64,000 nucleotides of DNA, taken from assembly GCF_902459465.1 (NCBI RefSeq), contig NC_047074.1, forward strand, positions 14,198,001-14,262,000, read 5' to 3'. The notes beneath the pieces are model-generated. The model saw only the letters and a program-made list of their open reading frames with translations. It had not been told where the DNA came from and searched no databases. The translations under genes and the position numbers were made by a program. This document shows positions 50,090-59,622 of this stretch, piece by piece. How positions within the stretch are numbered: the first letter of the stretch is position 1; every line of letters starts with the position of its first letter. The stretch is from Asterias rubens (taxonomy: Eukaryota).

Positions 50090-51377
50090 TTTGACTACAA
50101 TTTACAAATGCATTCACAAAATGAAGTTTACCTGCCAATTGATTTTTAGTCAAAACAATTCATTGCTTTCACATGACTACGTGCCTTTTGCACATGACTC
50201 GTCTGAGCGCAGACTCGACAACTTCAATCAATCATTCGTGTTCGAACTATGTGCTCCAGACTACTTTGTGTCAGGCATTTCCTGGTGACCCTTGAACCTT
50301 ATTGTTTTCTCGTTGGCCACGCCCACTTTAAACATTCTACCAATAAGGTTTGATCTGGGTCCAATTTCACAAAGCTGTTTAGCAGAAAACACTGCCTGGC
50401 AAATTTATTTGCTAAGCAAAATTAGATGACTGCGCTATATAAGAAGACTTCGATGTTATTATTGGGGTAGGCCTGTCAGTTGTATTGTAGTGTTAACTTT
50501 ATGGAAAGTCAGGTGGTAGGCCTACACTGCTAAGCACGATTTGTCTGTGTTTAGCAATTTTATGAAACAATTGGGCTCAGTTCTCTTTCAGGGGCACGAT
50601 TAGAACTCAATTACTTGGACTTTGAAGACAGGTAAATGAGACAAAAACTGTTATTTTCTTTTTCAATAAACGATTTAATTCATTGAGCTCAAAGAAAAAC
50701 AGAGTGTACAAAACAGACAAACAGAATTCACGTTCAAAAGTCTATCTCGATCAATTTCCATACTGTTATAATTCAAATTCCTTGATTTTTGTTAATAACG
50801 TTAAATATATGGATTGGTGTTTCTTGTAACTATATTTTAACTCATATCCTGCTGTAATAATTAAGCGTTTTTTTTGTCAAAGAATTTTGTGAAGTTAACA
50901 AAATTGGTTTTAATGAAGAAAAAAAAAACCTTGTTCGTGAGTGTGCTAGCGGTTTGAGATAGCGCCCTCTATTGGTAATTGTTTGTTGGCGGTATTAGAG
51001 TAAGTCTATGTATAGTGTGGATCGTTGAATAAACAACCGGAAGGTCTTCAACCAAATCTAATCCTAATATTGTTTTATTGCCAAGTAAAGGGAAGTAAGT
51101 GACAATCATGAAATGGTGCAGTTTAGGAACTGACTTATTTTGTTTGATTGGTTCACTTGAGCCTGTAAAACATTATTTTTTATGTAGCCCTATTACAGGA
51201 TATACACAAGAATTGTCTCCTTATTTGTCAAAATTGAGTAAAACTTACTTTTAAAAAAGCGAATAACATTATAAAAAGCTAACAATAATACTCAACGTCA
51301 CGCTAAAGATGAGAATGCCAAGAGAATCCCCTTTGCGGCCCTTTGTGTAGGCATATAGTGAATGACTCAACAGTTTC

Positions 51378-54300
51378 TTAATGAGCTTTCTTGTGGAGCA
51401 CTTTCAACCACTTGAAGAACTTCACCAATGTTCCTTTCGATCCTGGTATCTCCCGTCCAATCTCAGGGGTTGGTTCGGGTGACGTCACGGGAATCAGTCC
51501 GCCGTTGTCGATCCGCACGCGGACGGTCGGTTGTGTTGGTTCAGGTGGCGTCACGGGAACTAATCCGCCATTATCAATTCTGACGCGGACGGTCGGTTTT
51601 GAGTGGCTGTGTTTTCTATGGTGGTGGTGGTGCTTCTTTGTTGGCCGGGAATCGACCACATCACCCCTGTGCTCTGATTGGCTATAGTGACGGCTGTTCT
51701 CCACATTGATTGGCCAAACGTCTGGAGTGACGTCACGTGCATGCCGGTCATGAGACTTGAGAAGGGAAACTCCAAGCAGAACCAGTTTCAGTTTGAGCTG
51801 TGTGTTTGTCTTCGTGTCGAACACTGTGTCTATAAAATGTCCTTTGTATACCTAATGCAAACGGGAAAAAAGGAACAGAAAGGTCATAATAATGAAGTCT
51901 CGGGCCAATGCCACCACGGAGAAACTCTATTCAGGCAACCAGTTCCAGGCTGAAGTCCCCTCGCTGATCAAAACGAGTATCTCGACCATTTTTGAATCTC
52001 GAAAAGATCGCATTTCAGGCAACTTTTTGACATCCAGATTTCAGTGGTGTCCGTTTGTGATTATTGAAGCCACATAGATGCGGTTGGTATCCGCTGAGTG
52101 TCAACTTGCTACACGTGAATGATTCGACTTTTTATATGAAAATATCGCGACAGGTTTTACTCAACAAGCACAATTTTCAGCTCAAATTTTCACTGACTCA
52201 ATATTAATTTACCATATCAGTATTACATTGACAAAAAACAATAATCTATGACCTTATCTTTAAGATACAAAACAGCAAAGATATGACCTTTATAAGAGCC
52301 ATAAACATTATCAAAATAGGGGGCCTTGTTGTTAATCAGTTGTATACTGACATTTGAGCAAAGGTTGCTGTGAGTTTTAGCCTTGCTTAAAAACACTAAA
52401 TCATTAGATTACATCCTTCGGGTGGAATCGGTCATCGAACTTGCGAGATAATAATGAAAGAAAAAAACTCACCCTTGTCACACGAAGTTGTGTGCGTTCA
52501 GATGGTTGATTTCGAGACCTCAAGTTCCAAATCTGAGGTCTCGAAATCAAATTCGTGGAAAATTACGTCTTTCTCGAAAACTATGGCACTTCAGAGGGAG
52601 CCGTTTCTCACAATGTTTTATACCATCAACCTTTCCCCATTACTCATCACCAAGTAAGGTTTTATGCTAATAATTATTTTGAGTAATTACCAATAGTGTC
52701 CACTGCCTTTAAAGCAAATAATTAAGTTTTGTGATTTACCTTCAAAATTTGAAGAGCTTTAAGAATAAGACTCAACTCTAGTTCTTTCAAGTCGACATCC
52801 AAAACAATAACTGTTTTCACGTCCTGAAATAAACAAAACATAGAGACATGCAGTTAATAAGTAGCTTTATTTAGTTGCTTATTGGACGACCTCCTGGGGT
52901 TCAGACCTCGTGGGGTTATTTGAAACGTTTAATAATCAGGGAGTATTGATGAAGAGGGGAGGGGGGAGGAGTGGGAGGAGGAGGAGGAGGGGGAAGGGAG
53001 GAAAACAACAACAGCAACAAAGAAGAGGAAGAAGCCTTTATGCATAGTGGGGTTTGAGGCGTTGCATGGTGAGGTATCAATTTAGTTTGCGGTAACACCA
53101 TGTGTGTGTCTACTCGCCAGGTAGGGTGTTGTTCTTTAGAGAACTGTCTTGCTTGATTCTACCGCGGAGTAGCGAATTCGGGAGACTTTTCAGTTCTGAA
53201 AAGAACTGTCCTTTATGCATTTTATTGTCTAATGTTATAATAACAATATATCAGCACTCGGCAACTTACCTGTAAAATGTGGATGGCTTTTAGGAGCAAA
53301 GTGAGTTTCAAATCGGCAACCAGGTGACCAGCAAAATGTGACGTCAATTTTTTGTCCTGTAATTAAAAAAATTATGTTTATTATTCAAATTCAGACTTTT
53401 AAATTTATTTAAACACTAGTAACAAACCCTTTTAAATAAAAAAAACGAAGAAGGGAACAGATAAATTGATTTTGTAAATGACAATTAAATTTCTTTAAAA
53501 CTTACTTTTAGTAGCAAGATGGCTTTGAGAATCAATTTGAATTTGAGTTCCTCCGTCATCTCACCGTGGCGAGGTAGCATTCTATGGACTTCATCTTTCT
53601 TTGAGGTCTAGAAATTTTAAATAACCAAAAAAGCAATAATTTTTTAGACAGAATATAAATGACACTTTTATAGAGTGTGTCAAAAACATTAAGCAAGTAA
53701 CTTTGTTAGCAGGTTTCCTCCGTCTTACGAGCTACAGTGATTAAAGGAACTGGACACTATAGGTAATTACTTTATATAATGTCATTGATAATATTGAAGT
53801 CTTATATATAGCGCACTCAAAATAACTGTTGCATAAAAAACTTACTTGGTAACGAGCAAAGGAGAGCTGTTGATTTTTGATAGTAAGTATAAAACATTGT
53901 GAGAAACGGCTCCCTCTGAAGTAACATAGTTTTTTTTAGAAATAGGTAAGTTCTCACTCACTTAATATTAAGTATCTGGAGTACACAAAGTAATGCAACA
54001 AGGTTTTTTTCTGTCATTATTCTCTTGCAAATTCGATGAACATTTGAGCGCAAGTGTTCACTGGTTTGTTATTTTATGCATATTTTGGGATACACTGAAG
54101 TGAGAATATTGGTCTTTGGCAATTACCGAACGAGCCTGTTCACTACATAAATGACACAGAATATTTCTTTTCGTACCTTCAATAACTCCAAGGCCTTCAA
54201 GATTAACTCTAACTTGAGATCATCACGCATCGAGTCGGGAAACAGACCGTCAACATCTATCATCTCATCTCCATCCGTAGGCAGCTGAAAAAAAAATGTA

Positions 54301-54880
54301 AAGTCTATGTTACCAAAACGAGGCTGGGAGGTAAATCGTCTGGGACTCTGTAATGAGTAATAGCAGCTTGGAAGTAATTCAGAAACGTAAATTTATTGAG
54401 CTACTAGTGACTCTTTACAATAGATGGTCTGATATCTTGGACAACAAAAAAATTGCAGATCACGACAAAGACAAAGGACAAATTCTCAATTAACCGCTCC
54501 AGATTTTCGGTAATATCTTAAAGACGGTACCTCTTGAACTGAAATATTTACAATATTGTAGATCCACTAAAATATTGTGAAAGATTAAATAAATCGAGCG
54601 GTCCCAAAACAAAATGTAGGCTTGCCTTTAAGCTGGCGTTTGTGCACGTGGCCTATTCAGGATAAATAAATAAAACAAGTCTACTTACAATAGCGACACT
54701 TTCTGAAGACATGATTTCATCTTCATAGTCAGGGATGCTTTCCGTGGCGTTCATCATAGCATCTTCTCCTCCATGGTCCTTCCCTCCGAAGATGTTGGTT
54801 AAGAACATCACGCATCCTCCAGTTGCGATGACAACCACCAAGACCACAACCACGACCAAAAGAAGTATCTTACAACTCAT
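51378..54880 (-). CDS. Orphan secreted protein, 319 aa, with four exon-encoded Leu/Lys helices, a His tract, a 21-aa repeat and a cationic amphipathic C-terminus
   Basis: Exons 54880-54689, 54284-54177, 53607-53506, 52823-52740, 51851-51378; all introns phase 0 with canonical sites; 960 nt. Hydrophobic N-terminus MSCKILLLVVVVVLVVVIATGG. TATATAAA upstream. The internal repeat differs mostly at synonymous sites. Confidence 0.85.
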
Positions 54881-55056
54881 TATTAAGAGAAACTTATTCT
54901 TTGTATTATACACAAATTTATCTAAAACTAAAAAGTCTTACACAACTTCTGGAACTTTTTTTTAGTGCACCGAGGTTCTCGAAATAATGCTGTTGCTTGG
55001 AGTAAATTTTTCTGGAGCTGGAAAAATTGTGTTTGACTCTCTCTAGCAAACCTCAG

Positions 55057-55064
55057 TTTATATA
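55057..55064 (-). promoter_or_regulatory. TATA box of the minus-strand orphan secreted gene
   Basis: TATATAAA on the minus strand ~180 nt upstream of the ATG at 54880. Confidence 0.65.
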
Positions 55065-57842
55065 GTATTTACCTTGCTAGGTATTTTAGGTTGGGTTTTA
55101 TGAGTTTTTAGTTAATTTTGGGATAAGTTTGTTGTGAGACGGCCCACGCACGGCACTCCTTGACCGTGATGGTTTACATCCATGCTACCGTTTCCTGGGT
55201 CGATGAAACGGTATTCCGAGCAGCGCTGCATGGTGCCTGGGTTTGCTTGACGCACCGGTGTTATTTTAGACGACTCAGCGGACCCTGGTATGTAATTCCT
55301 GGGTTGGTTTTTGCAATTCATGCTTTTGTATCGTCTTCAGTTGTTAAAAAAAACAAAAAAAACAAACAAAAACATCGTGTGGCCATGGACACTCCATTTA
55401 TCTTTGATCTGTTTATATTATTATTAAAAAAAGATAATGACACACATTTGGTAACAACACAGACAATTACCATTTGGGGAGTGGACGGGACAAACCCAAA
55501 TCTTCAACAAATGGGCCCAATCTACTGAAAACACTCTTATTAAAGGTTTTTAGACTGACATTCACTCTCAAATCGAATGAAATTCATGGACAAATCATCT
55601 ACAGGTTGTCAACAGTAGCTACTTTCACTGACTCGACTCCAGTGATTTGCAGACTTAAAAGAAAGAATTGTTATAGATAATAATTATTAGGCCCAACACA
55701 AAGTACATTGGGCTTACAGATAAAGTATTTGTAATTCAAGGGCGGTTTTCCACAAAGTCCATCTTTCTATCCCATGTAAACTGTGTGCAAATTGGTTAAC
55801 TTTTATATTATTTCCAATATTTTGCACGTGCACCCTTCTTTACATTCTTCTCGTTTGTAACTGGCCCAGACCAGTTATAGCGGCCATTGCAATGAAGTTG
55901 TCATTGTGGCGCAATAACAATCCCGTCCAAAATGATTGGGCCACCTGACAATAATAATTATACTCCCCACAGATGTTGTTTTCATCTTATAGTTCTTTAT
56001 TAATGATTCCTTTCCCATTTTATGGTTTGATTAACAGGGATTTAATGAGTCACAGTGGTTTGGTTCCCTGTTAAGAATCTTGACCATTTTAGAATGAGTT
56101 TGTCTTGTCATCATGGACCAATTTCGTGGAGCTGCTCACCAGCCAGACTATCATATCACGTACAATTTGTAGCTGGTATCCTGCTAGTTTCTGCTTGCCA
56201 GACAATTGTTAAGCGATATTTTTCGCTTAAGCGACTTCATGAAATTTGGCCCTGATTCAAACAATGTTCTAGCGAGACCCAATTTCACAAAGCTGTTGTT
56301 AACAGAAAATACCGCTTAGCAAACTTCTCTGCTAATCCAGAAAGTAGTGGGCGCCCCAATGTAGTTTTGCCTGGTAAACTGTTTCTTTTAAGCAACACTT
56401 TTATGTGCCTACAGACTTTGTGAAGTGGGGCCTTGCAGGGTTGTAGACAAACCTAATTGTTGTAGTTGGGACAGAAACTCAACTTGGGCGGTGAATATAA
56501 GTCACTGACTCATATCAAAACACACTATAGACAATGATTGTAGAAATGGGAAAGTTCGGATATGCGTTGTAGACAGGAAATGTTGATTTTAGTCATTCCT
56601 ATTCATGGTGTATGTTCCTTAGAGGATGACTTCATTAGGATCTATCGGTTGGATATTATATTATTGGATTTCCAAATCAATTATTAGATATCGATCGGGC
56701 ATGCCAAATGACGATAGAAATGACCAGGTTGGGCTTGAAACCCGACCAATTTGACTTCACAATTATTGAAATGGGGTTTTTGCGCTTGAATGGTATACCT
56801 TTGGTAATTACTACAAAACAATAATGGCCAGAACAACTGACTTGGTACGAAGCTATTGACAATGTATAACATTTTGAGAAAGAATTGCGATTTTCAGATG
56901 GAGGATTTTAAAAGCATTTCAATCTGAGAAACATCAGATGTTGACAAACTCCATTTTACGGATTACTCTTCCTGCGTGGACATCACCGCCACGACTCTGC
57001 GGTGACGTCTTAAAACGCTACCGCCACATTTAAAATTAATTTTTTGCAGTTTAATTTAAGTATATATTTACTTCGTTTATTTATGATTGAAATGATCGAC
57101 CAATTAAAAAAAAATGAAGGCACGCCTATACTTAGTCTTTAAGGAACTATGGACCAAGCTACCATGCAAGGTTCAAATGATAGGCCTATAACTGAAACCA
57201 CCGGTGCCAAACGATAAGTTTTCGGGGGGGGGGGCACAAGAAGGTGCACCGTATTTTTCGTGGGGTGGGGGGGGGGAGACTTCTACAACCTACCAATTAA
57301 ACGGTTGTTTCCGTTCACTTATTTGTTATACATGATATAATATGACCCGAGTGTCTAAACCGATTGGAGCTGAACATATGGGGTGTGGTATTAGACGTAT
57401 ACGCCCTAAGCCAATTCCCCATCATCGATGATCAGAGGTGATAGGGAATATGATTTGTTCATAATTTCCAACAGTGACAACTGCAAAAGACTACTGTTGC
57501 AGTAGCTACAGATATTGAATACAATCAGTTTAAACACAAATTGGCACAAAACACACCACTTTCAAAACATCAGTTTCGGTGAACCCCGGAAAAGTACAAA
57601 ATGGACTCGGTATACAGAAGGGATGTTCGCCTCGTAGACAAGGAACCGACACAGGAAATCTGTCACACTTTTAAAACAATAGAATCTTTACCTGTCAGTT
57701 AAAATGGCATACGTGCAGTAACATAAGTAGGTCGGACAACTCCTCCTTCAAAAAAATTTGTGTCCAGAACTAAAACTAAAACCATTAATCTAACGTCCAG
57801 GACCCGTTTCCTCATCGGAAGTGCGCACCCTCCCGAGGATTG

Positions 57843-57978: not shown

Positions 57979-59622
57979 ATGAATCACGGGTCATTCTTAG
58001 CGGTGTTTCTGCTCCTTGCGTCGGTATCTTACCTCGCCAATGGGGACCGCTGGAACCAGGAGTCACAACAGCCACTCACAGACTGGCAGGTTAGCCTACT
58101 TGCCCAAGATCTGGTAAGTTTTATTTTGAAATATAAACAAAATAAATTCGTCTCTTCTGGAAAGTATTCGGAGCAAGTTTTCTTTTTACGGGACACGTTG
58201 GGTAATTTTTATAAGACCGGTATTCTTGGTGTATTTTTTGTTTTGTTTCATTGGTCATCTAAATTTGCAAGAGAATAATGCAAGAAAAAAACCACCCTTG
58301 TTGCACAAAAATCGTGCAAAGTTACCCCTTTCTCAGCAATTTTACTTCAGAGGGAGCCGTTTCTCACAATGTTTTATATTATCAACGGCTCCCCGTTGCT
58401 CATTATCAAGTAAGTTAATTATGCTAATACTTTGAGCAATTACCAAACGTGTTCTGTGCCTTAATTTAGATTTGTGTCAGGATTTAGACGTTTTTGTGGG
58501 ATGGGGGTTTGCTGAGTGGTTTCCTCCCTGCCATTCGCTTTGTGCGACCCTGGTTCGATTGCCAGACTGAAACTTTGCATGTGGATTGGGGTTTTAGTCT
58601 GTTGGCCTAACTAGTTGTTTTCCTCCCACGTCTAAAACCAAAATTTCATAAACTTGTCTTCTTAACAAAAGTTGGTGTGATGTTTCCATTAGTATACTTT
58701 TCCTTCATATTCAGCTTCGAATCGATTTTTTTATTCACTTGGAGGGTGGTGTTTGGGTGGGGGGGGGGGGGGGTGATGGGCCAGAGTGAATGAACGATCG
58801 GATCCAGTAAATAACTGCCACCTCTCGAAATCTTAAAAACATTATTATACCCGTAGAAACTCTGGCTTAATTACTCGGGTGGGATTCCAACCCAAGACCT
58901 TTGCCATTATAGAGCTGATGTCTTACCAACATAGACTACTGTCATTGCCCAGTAGCTATAGATGCAGTTCGAATCCTATATGTTAGCAGCAGGTATTGCA
59001 TCATTTCAAAAGATTTTAAATTTGCATCGTGATAAAGAATGGGTTAGTTTGACCATAGAGGTAGAAATACCATGGTTATACTGTTACACCGATGTGTATA
59101 AGCACTACATACTAAGTACTTTTACAAGTTCTGTGGACAAAAATCACACAGACATATTTACTCGTGTGGGTGGAGTTTCGCTGCCCATGTCTCATGTTTG
59201 TAAATATTCTGTTTTCCATGTAGCCGGACGAGCTACGTACACTCTATGAGCAGATAATTGATCCCAACGTGGATGAGATCAACAAAGAAAACTACATCTG
59301 GCGAAGCTTTGAGCTCCTCAAATACAGGAAGTACAGACGTTATAGTTGGTTCTACTACTGGCTTCTCGACATCAGTGGGTCCGACCAGCAGCAACTCGGC
59401 AGGCAAACTCCAAAAGGACAAGGGGGACGCACACCACCGAACATCGGGGGATACACTCCAGGCGGACGTACTCCGCCAAACATGGGGGGACACACTCCAG
59501 GGGGACGCACACCGCCGAATCTCGGGGGACGCACGCCCGGTGGACGCACTCCAAAACGCGGCGGACAGAGACCACGACAGAGACAAAGACATGGAAAAGG
59601 TCACGGACGCAATATTGTATAG
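57979..59622 (+). CDS. Orphan secreted Gly/Arg/Thr/Pro-repeat protein, ~177 aa (2 exons)
   Basis: Exon 1 57979-58113 (signal peptide MNHGSFLAVFLLLASVSYLANG; donor CTG|gtaagt, alternative CAG|gttagc at 58089). Exon 2 59224-59622 (acceptor ttttccatgtag); only the phase-0 frame is open from this acceptor. Repeat codons vary at wobble positions (CGC/CGT, ACA/ACT/ACG, CCA/CCG/CCC, AAC/AAT). TATATAAA at 57843, AATAAA at 59752. Confidence 0.82.

What the first reader, a model, noticed from the sequence alone, without database searches (positions are those of the whole stretch)
51378..54880. Orphan secreted protein built from four phase-0 exons each carrying an LKLELILKALELLK-type helix
Seen in sequence: exons 2-4 end in LKLELILKALELLK, LKFKLILKAILLLK and LELSLILKALQILK, and exon 5 carries LKLKLVLLGVSLLK. 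The 14-mer is kept while the upstream half of each exon has diverged, and every intron is phase 0, the signature of exon-by-exon tandem duplication. The protein has a signal peptide, an acidic pro-like region and no cysteine after the N-terminal leader. The ORF track misses exons 2-4. I recognise no family. Inference: the Leu/Lys helices resemble synthetic LK and KL4 surfactant peptides and could form a four-helix bundle, bind lipid or air-water interfaces, or self-assemble (adhesive, mucus or biomineral matrix).
Basis: partly seen in the sequence, partly recalled or inferred. Interest (0 to 1): 0.82.

Follow-up and report, generated by a model that had tools for sequence, protein, structure and literature searches.

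The report
Starfish-only secreted five-helix repeat protein
This is a real, expressed starfish gene (Asterias rubens LOC117298779) from a small, unstudied protein family found so far only in starfish; five consecutive exons each encode one Leu/Lys-rich helix, the five helices are predicted to pack into one compact domain, and the function is unknown.

Summary
The minus-strand gene has six coding exons, not five, and five LK units, not four. All introns are GT-AG and phase 0. A spliced 1,896-nt contig in a public run matches the junctions, and my model is letter-identical to RefSeq XP_033638000.1 ("uncharacterized protein LOC117298779", Asterias rubens).

It is not a species-level orphan. Orthologues occur in A. 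amurensis, Acanthaster planci and Patiria miniata. A second paralogue subfamily, with a textbook signal peptide, has the same exon-per-helix layout. No relative was found outside starfish, there is no Pfam match, and no paper mentions it.

Profiles of the five units match each other (HHalign E 1e-12 to 3e-6), while third codon positions are saturated, so the exon duplication is ancient. AlphaFold with nine homologues (pLDDT 76, pTM 0.74) places each LK motif in one of five packed helices. Fold searches give only generic TPR/14-3-3-like resemblance.

The LK helices have low helical hydrophobic moments, which fits buried core helices and not surfactant-like peptides. New here: RGD is strongly enriched in the family (7 seen, 0.31 expected), and both subfamilies keep a cationic C-terminal helix. 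First readers noted this same stretch twice more on this window (s1-150462, s1-150691).

The parts
55057..55064 (-). TATATAAA box upstream of the transcript start
   Evidence: Read directly. It lies 43-50 nt upstream of the 5' end (55014) of the spliced contig.
54881..55014 (-). 5' UTR, minimum extent
   Evidence: run X7 record 23, letters 1-326 lie on 54689-55014.
54689..54880 (-). Exon 1 coding part (residues 1-64). Leader MSCKILLLVVVVVLVVVIATGG (54815-54880), conserved NAT sequon (54743-54751), and the start of the acidic region.
   Evidence: The donor is gtaagt. The leader aligns with the cleavable signal peptide of subfamily B.
54177..54284 (-). Exon 2 (residues 65-100), LK unit 1; helix motif at 54177-54218
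   Evidence: record 23 letters 327-434 lie exactly on these borders. AlphaFold helix at residues 85-101.
53506..53607 (-). Exon 3 (residues 101-134), LK unit 2; motif at 53506-53547
   Evidence: record 23 letters 435-537. AlphaFold helix at residues 119-132.
53270..53356 (-).
   Evidence: acceptor ttaattacag, donor gtaagt, phase 0. It is present in RefSeq model P0001. FAGH..LKLTL is among the best conserved stretches in the family. AlphaFold helix at residues 147-163. The 173-nt unlisted part of X7 record 23 equals exons 4+5.
52740..52823 (-). Exon 5 (residues 164-191), LK unit 4; motif at 52740-52781
   Evidence: AlphaFold helix at residues 175-192.
51381..51851 (-). Exon 6 coding part (residues 192-348). 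Contains LK unit 5 (51756-51797), RHAR (51735-51746), RGD (51660-51668), His tract (51603-51632), two 22-aa PTVRVRIDNGGL units (51468-51596), and the cationic C-terminal helix KGTLVKFFKWLKVLHKKAH (51381-51437). Stop codon at 51378-51380.
   Evidence: record 23 letters 711-1896 lie on 50685-51848; 66-nt tandem duplication, 82% identical.
50685..51377 (-). 3' UTR, minimum extent
   Evidence: X7 record 23. An AATTAAA lies just beyond it at 50674-50680.

Best explanation
SHOWN. This is an expressed six-exon gene, Asterias rubens LOC117298779. It belongs to an undescribed protein family found so far only in starfish, with two paralogue subfamilies.

The protein is modular. It has an N-terminal secretory leader, a strongly acidic stretch, and a conserved Cys-free domain of about 160 residues built from five homologous units. 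After that comes a fast-evolving linker, which is His-rich with two VRVRIDNGG units in this gene and Thr/Glu-rich and mucin-like in the paralogues. It ends in a conserved cationic amphipathic C-terminal helix.

Each unit is one phase-0 exon that ends exactly at the C-terminus of its LK helix. The array arose by ancient exon duplication, before the two subfamilies split and before Forcipulatida and Valvatida diverged.

PREDICTED. The five LK segments are not free surfactant-like peptides. They are the hydrophobic core helices of a single compact helical-repeat domain with a generic TPR/14-3-3-like arrangement.

INFERRED (about 0.3 on its own). The protein works outside the cell as an adaptor or matrix-type glycoprotein. 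The folded LK domain would be a binding module, a recurrent RGD would engage integrins, and the basic C-terminal helix would hold it on polyanionic surfaces such as glycosaminoglycans, mucus, membranes or microbes.
For: Gene model and expression:
- Canonical phase-0 junctions.
- A spliced contig with these junctions in run X7, and partial contigs in X1.
- Letter identity to XP_033638000.1.

Family:
- Orthologues in A. amurensis, Acanthaster and Patiria, plus subfamily B in all of these and in A. rubens (LOC117302151).
- 53 invariant columns across 10 proteins, nearly all of them in the LK domain and a few in the C-terminal tail.

Exon duplication:
- All repeat-profile pairs match at HHalign probability 88-98%.
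- Third-position identity between units is 0.14-0.50, against 43-71% amino-acid identity.
- The paralogue has the same exon borders.

Fold:
- AlphaFold on the LK domain with 9 sequences gives pLDDT 76 and pTM 0.74. Helices at residues 85-101, 119-132, 147-163, 175-192 and 207-226 coincide with the five motifs.
- The single-sequence run was poor.

Helix character:
- LK 14-mers have muH(100 degrees) of 0.18-0.30 at mean H of 0.25-0.39.

Extracellular location:
- Subfamily B starts with a classical signal peptide ending SQA|Y, which aligns with ATGG|C here.
- The NAT/NST sequon is conserved in subfamily A.
- Subfamily B has Thr-rich linkers.

RGD:
- 7 occurrences in 7 non-redundant members against 0.31 expected from shuffles, at four non-homologous sites.
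- The permuted tripeptides RDG, GRD, GDR and DGR all occur 0 times.

Tail:
- Net charge +6 to +10 and muH 0.39, conserved in both subfamilies.
Against: - There is no protein-level, tissue or localisation evidence. The run ids are coded, so the tissue is unknown.
- No signal-peptide predictor was available. The subfamily A leader, with its conserved hydrophobic extension (about 30 residues), could instead be a type II signal anchor.
- The AlphaFold model rests on only 9 related sequences.
- Fold matches are within the noise range for helical repeats: Foldseek E >= 0.03 with TM < 0.5, and VIA Z <= 9.4.
- RGD positions are not conserved, one member (Acanthaster, subfamily A) has none, and RGD in a sequence does not prove integrin binding.
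- The family was absent from the starfish coelomocyte proteome, spine secretome and gravid-tissue supplement tables I could search.
Confidence: 0.55

Rival explanations
1. Precursor of a host-defence peptide. The acidic stretch and the LK domain act as a pro-part that neutralises or chaperones the basic C-terminal region. Cleavage at RHAR by a furin-type convertase, or further processing, then releases the cationic amphipathic tail and the VRVRIDNGG hairpin-like units as membrane-active peptides.
For: - The charge layout is -15 for the acidic stretch against +6 for the tail, and the tail has muH 0.39.
- RHAR is conserved in all subfamily A orthologues.
- The tail is conserved in both subfamilies.
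- The language-model feature search puts apidaecin-type precursors among its nearest clusters, but at sub-threshold scores of 0.55-0.69.
- First-reader note s1-150462 proposes the same reading.
Against: - The LK domain is the best conserved part of the protein, which is unusual for a mere pro-piece.
- Subfamily B lacks RHAR and the hairpin units.
- No dibasic site sits directly before the tail in this gene.
- No peptide evidence exists, and the tail has no match in PDB.
Confidence: 0.2
2. One reading: the Leu/Lys helices act individually as surfactant-like amphipathic peptides, binding lipid or air-water interfaces or self-assembling in the manner of LK or KL4 peptides.
For: - Leu/Lys-rich composition.
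- The only PDB sequence-profile hits are de novo designed idealised helical repeats (dTor_9x57R, E 4.9e-7), which shows that the sequence looks "designed".
- The domain is Cys-free, as exchangeable apolipoproteins are.
Against: - The helical hydrophobic moment is low (0.18-0.30) and the hydrophobic face covers most of each helix.
- AlphaFold packs the five helices into one domain at high local confidence, with pLDDT 87-94 over most of the units.
- The conserved inter-helix segments (FPD, FAGH, G.F.D.VF.TK) indicate a fixed tertiary fold.
- There is no Pfam apolipoprotein or surfactant match beyond a chance hit to the poly-Val leader.
Confidence: 0.1
3. Topology variant for subfamily A only. 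The leader of about 30 residues is an uncleaved type II signal anchor. The protein sits on the cell surface or in a secretory-pathway membrane, and its ectodomain is shed at RHAR.
For: - The hydrophobic run spans residues 4-33, and the segment GGCVMFLTNIFGG is conserved among subfamily A orthologues.
- The single-sequence AlphaFold run gives one continuous helix over residues 3-31 at pLDDT 81-92.
- The feature search's nearest clusters are type II viral attachment glycoproteins, at a weak score of 0.64.
Against: - Subfamily B has an ordinary cleavable signal peptide at the aligned position.
- ATGG|C satisfies the -3/-1 rule (rule taken from established knowledge).
- No predictor was run.
Confidence: 0.25
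4. Not a functional gene: chance ORFs or a decaying lineage-specific transcript.
For: No function, domain or publication is known for it.
Against: - A spliced transcript exists.
- The reading frame, exon borders and 53 invariant residues are conserved across two paralogue subfamilies and four species.
- In run X6 (a relative), exon 6 differs at about 2% of sites against more than 4% plus indels in the adjacent intron (tables 3 and 4).
Confidence: 0.02

Closest known systems
TPR / 14-3-3-like alpha-alpha solenoid domains, including the five-helix peptide-substrate-binding domain of collagen prolyl 4-hydroxylase (6evl)
   Same: Repeat length of about 28-36 residues and an up-down packing of helices. 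These are the best structural matches: ESM Atlas TM 0.57, VIA Z up to 9.4, and 6evl at Z 7.0 with 93 of its 94 residues aligned at 3.3 A. Some of these domains work in the secretory pathway as peptide-binding modules.
   Different: There is no sequence match to any TPR, Sel1 or 14-3-3 model. Each unit has one long helix plus a conserved non-helical segment, whereas TPR units have two helices. TM stays below 0.5 in Foldseek, and the Z values are within the stated noise for helical repeats.
Sea urchin SpTransformer (Sp185/333) immune proteins (features taken from the abstract of PMC3342357 and from my own knowledge)
   Same: Echinoderm-restricted, secreted and essentially Cys-free, with a hydrophobic leader, an RGD motif, a His-rich region and a distinct C-terminal region.
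   Different: No sequence similarity was found in any search. SpTrf genes have two exons and a Gly-rich region, are highly diversified, and are described as largely disordered. This family has six exons, a conserved folded LK domain, and only 2-3 genes per genome.
Vertebrate SIBLING/SCPP matrix proteins such as osteopontin and MEPE (own knowledge)
   Same: Secreted, acidic, Cys-poor and RGD-bearing, with all-phase-0 introns, a large last exon and a basic C-terminal part. MEPE, enamelin and ODAPH clusters appear among the feature-search neighbours at sub-threshold scores of 0.52-0.67.
   Different: No homology was found. SIBLINGs are intrinsically disordered, whereas this family has a predicted folded helical domain. 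There is no evidence here of phosphorylation or mineral association.
Synthetic LK / KL4 peptides and exchangeable apolipoproteins
   Same: Leu/Lys-rich helical segments, tandem repetition, and no disulfides.
   Different: The helical amphipathicity is low, and the segments are predicted to be buried in a single domain. There is no 11/22-mer periodicity and no Pfam apolipoprotein match.

Membership tests
TPR / Sel1-like repeat proteins | Sequence match to TPR/SEL1 profile models (34-36-residue consensus with small and large residues at fixed positions) | tested here: not met
   hmmscan of all 10 family members against Pfam-A at E<=1 returns no TPR, SEL1 or 14-3-3 family. The single exons also return nothing.
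TPR / Sel1-like repeat proteins | Two antiparallel helices per repeat forming a superhelix | tested here: inconclusive
   AlphaFold gives one long helix per unit plus a mostly non-helical connector. Global superpositions on TPR proteins reach only TM 0.4-0.57 and Z 7-9.
Exchangeable apolipoproteins / surfactant-like amphipathic helix proteins | Class A amphipathic helices with high hydrophobic moment and 11/22-mer periodicity | tested here: not met
   muH(100 degrees) is 0.18-0.30 for the five 14-mers at mean H 0.25-0.39. The unit length is 28-36 residues. There is no Pfam apolipoprotein hit.
SpTransformer (Sp185/333) | Sequence homology to the element pattern of Sp185/333, and a two-exon gene | tested here: not met
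   No urchin protein was retrieved by phmmer against 1.84 billion representatives or by profile searches. The gene has six coding exons.
Secreted proteins (classical pathway) | Cleavable N-terminal signal peptide | tested here: inconclusive
   Subfamily B has an n/h/c-type leader ending SQA|Y, and the aligned site here is ATGG|C. The subfamily A hydrophobic run is long (residues 4-33), and no SignalP or TMHMM tool was available.
Integrin-binding RGD ligands | Exposed RGD that mediates integrin-dependent adhesion | not testable with these tools
   Only the enrichment could be shown: 7 observed against 0.31 expected, at four non-homologous sites that lie mostly in non-domain regions. Binding needs an assay.
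Cationic amphipathic antimicrobial peptide precursors | Proteolytic release of a cationic amphipathic peptide with antimicrobial activity | not testable with these tools
   The tail has charge +6 to +10 and muH 0.39, and RHAR is present in subfamily A only. There is no peptide or activity data.

The most novel reading that the evidence does not exclude
The LK family is a starfish-specific invention: a new extracellular helical-repeat fold built by exon duplication. It would work as an integrin-engaging, polyanion- or microbe-binding effector. That would make it a functional counterpart in starfish, which have no Sp185/333 genes, to the urchin SpTransformer proteins or to vertebrate matricellular SIBLINGs. 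The RGD would move between disordered segments over evolutionary time while the LK domain and the cationic tail stay fixed.
Probability: 0.2. Interest if true: 0.65.

Novelty: new variant of a known kind. Interest (0 to 1): 0.45.

Why it matters
Lineage-restricted secreted proteins are where echinoderm-specific biology tends to sit: immunity, adhesion, mutable connective tissue and the skeleton. Most of them are unannotated. This family is a clean case.

It is small (2-3 genes per genome) and old, since it predates the split of the major starfish orders. It has a simple exon-equals-helix architecture that shows how a folded domain can be assembled by exon duplication. It also combines features that can each be tested directly: the folded LK domain, the recurrent RGD, and the cationic tail.

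If the domain is a new extracellular binding fold, or if the protein is an immune or matrix effector, that would fill a gap for starfish models (Asterias, Patiria, and the reef pest Acanthaster). If not, it remains one more uncharacterized taxon-restricted gene.

Tried and rejected
- Pfam on single exons and on all ten family members returned only chance hits to the poly-Val leader.
- phmmer with the last exon against 1.84 billion representatives found only the gene itself, the Patiria orthologue, and low-complexity noise in P0003-P0006. In hindsight this query was too narrow. It did not even recover subfamily B, so it says little about distant relatives.
- Two profile searches of the 5.8 billion-protein set added only starfish proteins.
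- The PDB sequence profile search hit only designed toroid repeats. The C-terminal tail against PDB gave nothing.
- Single-sequence AlphaFold was uninformative at pLDDT 44.6.
- Foldseek against PDB and AFDB clusters, ESM Atlas shape search, and VIA-align wide gave only generic helical-repeat resemblance.
- ESM Atlas feature searches all scored below 0.75, so they are leads only.
- Literature searches by LOC and XP identifiers and by motif strings returned 0 papers.
- Supplements of the A. rubens coelomocyte proteome, the crown-of-thorns spine secretome and the gravid-starfish expression paper contained no occurrence of ids or motif strings. The sea-star footprint paper has no supplement held as text.
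- I considered a KKXX ER-retrieval reading of the ...HKKAH end and rejected it, because there is no C-terminal membrane span and the motif is not kept in subfamily B.
- I considered an LRR-like beta-alpha reading of LKLEL+ILKALELLK. It is not supported by the AlphaFold secondary structure.
- Tissue of expression could not be obtained because runs and samples are coded.
Full report
**1. What is in the sequence**

Reading the minus strand of 51300-54950 in three frames and locating splice signals gives six coding exons:
- E1 54689-54880
- E2 54177-54284
- E3 53506-53607
- E4 53270-53356
- E5 52740-52823
- E6 51381-51851, with the stop codon at 51378-51380

Every intron starts with GT, ends with AG behind a pyrimidine tract, and lies between codons (phase 0).

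It missed E4, which ends in LKLTLLLKAIHILQ. There are therefore five LK units, one at the 3' end of each of E2-E5 and one 19 codons into E6. The acceptor of E6 is ...gcattag|GTATAC at 51851. The two AGs further in, at the ttttatag and acacag sites, would break the frame.

**2. Is the gene real**

Yes. Laying Logan contigs of four public runs on 50500-56400 shows one 1,896-nt contig in run X7 (record 23). Its pieces lie on:
- 54689-55014 (E1 plus 5' UTR)
- 54177-54284 (E2)
- 53505-53607 (E3)
- 50685-51848 (E6 plus 3' UTR)

The 173 letters between the E3 and E6 pieces were not listed, but they equal E4 (87) plus E5 (84) plus the few border letters. A second run (X1) has a contig that leaves E6 at the same acceptor.

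Runs X5 and X6 carry co-linear genomic contigs. In X6, exon 6 differs at about 2% of sites, while the neighbouring intron differs at more than 4% and also has indels.

A TATATAAA box sits at 55057-55064, upstream of the contig's 5' end.

The joined 348-aa translation is letter-identical to protein P0001. That is RefSeq XP_033638000.1, "uncharacterized protein LOC117298779 [Asterias rubens]". The window is therefore common-starfish DNA, and an annotation pipeline has already predicted this gene.

**3. Relatives**

phmmer with the last exon against 1.84 billion representatives found only the gene itself and a Patiria miniata protein. The other four hits are low-complexity repeats.

Searches with the full protein and then with family profiles, together with cluster look-ups, define two subfamilies.

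Subfamily A (this gene):
- A. rubens
- A. amurensis, 97% identical
- Acanthaster planci LOC110980990
- P. miniata LOC119724072

Subfamily B:
- A. rubens LOC117302151
- A. amurensis
- Acanthaster LOC110984930
- Patiria LOC119726473 and LOC119726341

All are "uncharacterized", and all come from starfish. Both subfamilies occur in Forcipulatida (Asterias) and Valvatida (Patiria, Acanthaster), so the family and its duplication predate that split. The ordinal placement of these genera is from my own knowledge.

Absence elsewhere rests on word-indexed searches and one narrow exhaustive search. It is provisional.

**4. Architecture (alignment A2; statistics)**

(a) Leader. Subfamily B has a textbook signal peptide (MATMRRIVLGLVVVL...SQA|Y). 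Here the aligned leader is MSCKILLLVVVVVLVVVIATGG|C, followed by a conserved hydrophobic extension. It could be a cleaved signal peptide or a type II anchor, and I had no predictor to decide.

(b) Acidic stretch. Residues 34-86 have net charge -15. An N-glycosylation sequon (NAT/NST) is conserved in subfamily A.

(c) LK domain, residues about 71-238. It holds nearly all of the 53 columns that are invariant across ten proteins. These include DLKLxLILKAL, ELK..LIL.A, FAGH..LKLTL.LK, and G.F.D.VF.T....LK..L.

(d) Linker, which cannot be aligned between subfamilies. In this gene it carries RHAR (conserved in subfamily A only), an RGD, a His tract, and two 22-aa PTVRVRIDNGGL units encoded by a 66-nt tandem duplication that is 82% identical. 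In subfamily B it is Thr/Glu/Ser-rich and looks like a mucin stalk.

(e) C-terminal tail. Both subfamilies keep a cationic amphipathic tail (K.FKW.K..P.V.HKK.H) with charge +6 to +10 and muH 0.39.

Cys occurs only at residues 3 and 23.

**5. Origin of the repeats**

Profiles of the five units, cut from the family alignment, match each other in all ten pairs at HHalign probability 88-98% and E from 1e-12 to 3e-6. Several alignments extend into the upstream half of the unit, for example 28 columns for R1/R2.

At the DNA level, the 14 codons of the motif are 43-71% identical in amino acids but only 14-50% identical at third positions, which is close to random.

The A. rubens paralogue on another chromosome (locus L001) has the same layout. 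Its exons end in ...LKALVILK...LKALWIIN and ...LKAIDVLE, and the last exon starts with VYSGEYKD. No residues are missing at the junctions, which means phase 0.

The event is ancient and has been held by selection.

**6. Fold**

Single-sequence AlphaFold was poor, at pLDDT 44.6. With the nine-sequence domain alignment A3, the model reaches mean pLDDT 76 and pTM 0.74, and pLDDT 87-94 over most of units 2-5.

The five long helices fall at protein residues 85-101, 119-132, 147-163, 175-192 and 207-226. Each covers one LK motif plus its acidic N-cap, and each ends at an exon border.

Fold searches gave nothing specific:
- Foldseek against PDB and AFDB clusters: E >= 0.03 and TM < 0.5, with 14-3-3, TPR and designed repeats on top.
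- ESM Atlas shape search: TM up to 0.57 on TPR-like proteins.
- VIA-align wide: Z up to 9.4. The tool states this is within the common range for helical repeats.
- PDB sequence profile: only de novo designed toroid repeats.

I read this as a helical-repeat domain of generic TPR-like arrangement with no demonstrable homology.

The LK 14-mers are very hydrophobic, with low helical moment (0.18-0.30). That fits buried core helices and argues against the LK/KL4 surfactant analogy.

**7.

RGD occurs 7 times in 7 non-redundant family members, against 0.31 expected from composition-preserving shuffles. The four permutations RDG, GRD, GDR and DGR never occur.

The RGDs sit at four non-homologous places:
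- just after the signal peptide in valvatid subfamily B
- just before the tail in Asterias subfamily B and one Patiria subfamily B member
- in the linker in Asterias subfamily A (51660-51668 here)
- in unit 5 in Patiria subfamily A

Counting four independent gains against 0.31 expected gives a Poisson tail of about 3e-4 (my arithmetic). A short motif that is kept while its position moves is typical of functional linear motifs. This is the main reason I favour an extracellular integrin-contacting role, but it is inference only.

**8. Function**

Nothing is known. No paper in the library mentions any identifier or motif string. The searchable supplements of an A. rubens coelomocyte proteome, a crown-of-thorns spine secretome and a gravid-starfish expression study do not contain the family. 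Several RNA-like runs of the same species label hold the transcript and others hold none of it, which suggests tissue- or stage-restricted expression.

My best reading is a secreted, possibly glycosylated modular protein. The LK domain would be a folded binding module, RGD would contact integrins, and the basic tail would anchor it to polyanions or membranes.

The main rival is a defence-peptide precursor in which the acidic and LK part masks the cationic C-terminal peptides, with RHAR as a convertase site in subfamily A. The two readings are not exclusive.

**9. Comparison and novelty**

It resembles TPR-like solenoids in shape only. It resembles urchin SpTransformer proteins and vertebrate SIBLINGs in composition and logic: secreted, Cys-free, with RGD, a His-rich or acidic region, and phase-0 exons. 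It is a member of none of them (see the membership rows).

The gene's existence is already recorded in RefSeq. The family, its exon-equals-helix build, the predicted five-helix domain and the RGD enrichment are, as far as I could find, undescribed.

I rate it a new variant of a known kind (a taxon-restricted secreted helical-repeat protein) and moderately interesting.

Noticed in passing
window 57979-59622 (+) and locus L003 3017-4022 (-): The head-to-head neighbour is another uncharacterized secreted-looking gene with GGRTPPN repeats. It has an orthologue in the same divergent position next to the Patiria miniata orthologue: tblastn gives 47% identity at E 6e-25 for the repeat exon and 35% at E 7e-4 for the leader exon. 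The gene pair is therefore syntenic across starfish orders.
   Followed up: partly
window 52426-52712 and 53836-54095: Two inverted copies of an extremely abundant interspersed element lie in introns 5 and 2. The arms 52577-52623 and 53887-53933 are 96% complementary. Summed contig word depth reaches the millions in all four runs, and there are many chimeric joints. The element looks SINE- or MITE-like and was not classified.
   Followed up: no
window 51469-51600: A 66-nt tandem duplication (82% identical) encodes the two PTVRVRIDNGGL(V/I)PVT units. Asterias and Acanthaster have two copies and Patiria has one, so the copy number of this hairpin-like unit varies between species.
   Followed up: partly
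locus L002 1104-1634 (GCA_014845345.1, 2,035-nt contig): A contig filed in a genome assembly carries exons 1-3 of an 85%-identical relative already joined without introns, then runs on into intron-3-like sequence. It could be a partly spliced cDNA contaminant or a retrocopy in another forcipulatid starfish. The species was not identified.
   Followed up: no
proteins P0011 versus P0007, and P0002 (locus L003 7854-7976): The exon-5 acceptor is used at alternative upstream AGs in Acanthaster (isoform X1 adds YGNFQ) and in the Patiria model (which adds YSLIFFLFNFQ, apparently translated pyrimidine tract). These look like minor isoforms or annotation slips.
   Followed up: no
window 52916-53047: A purine/pyrimidine-rich low-complexity tract (GGAGGAGG...) lies in intron 4. 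Reads appear cut there in the read layout (skipped repeat 52947-53034).
   Followed up: no
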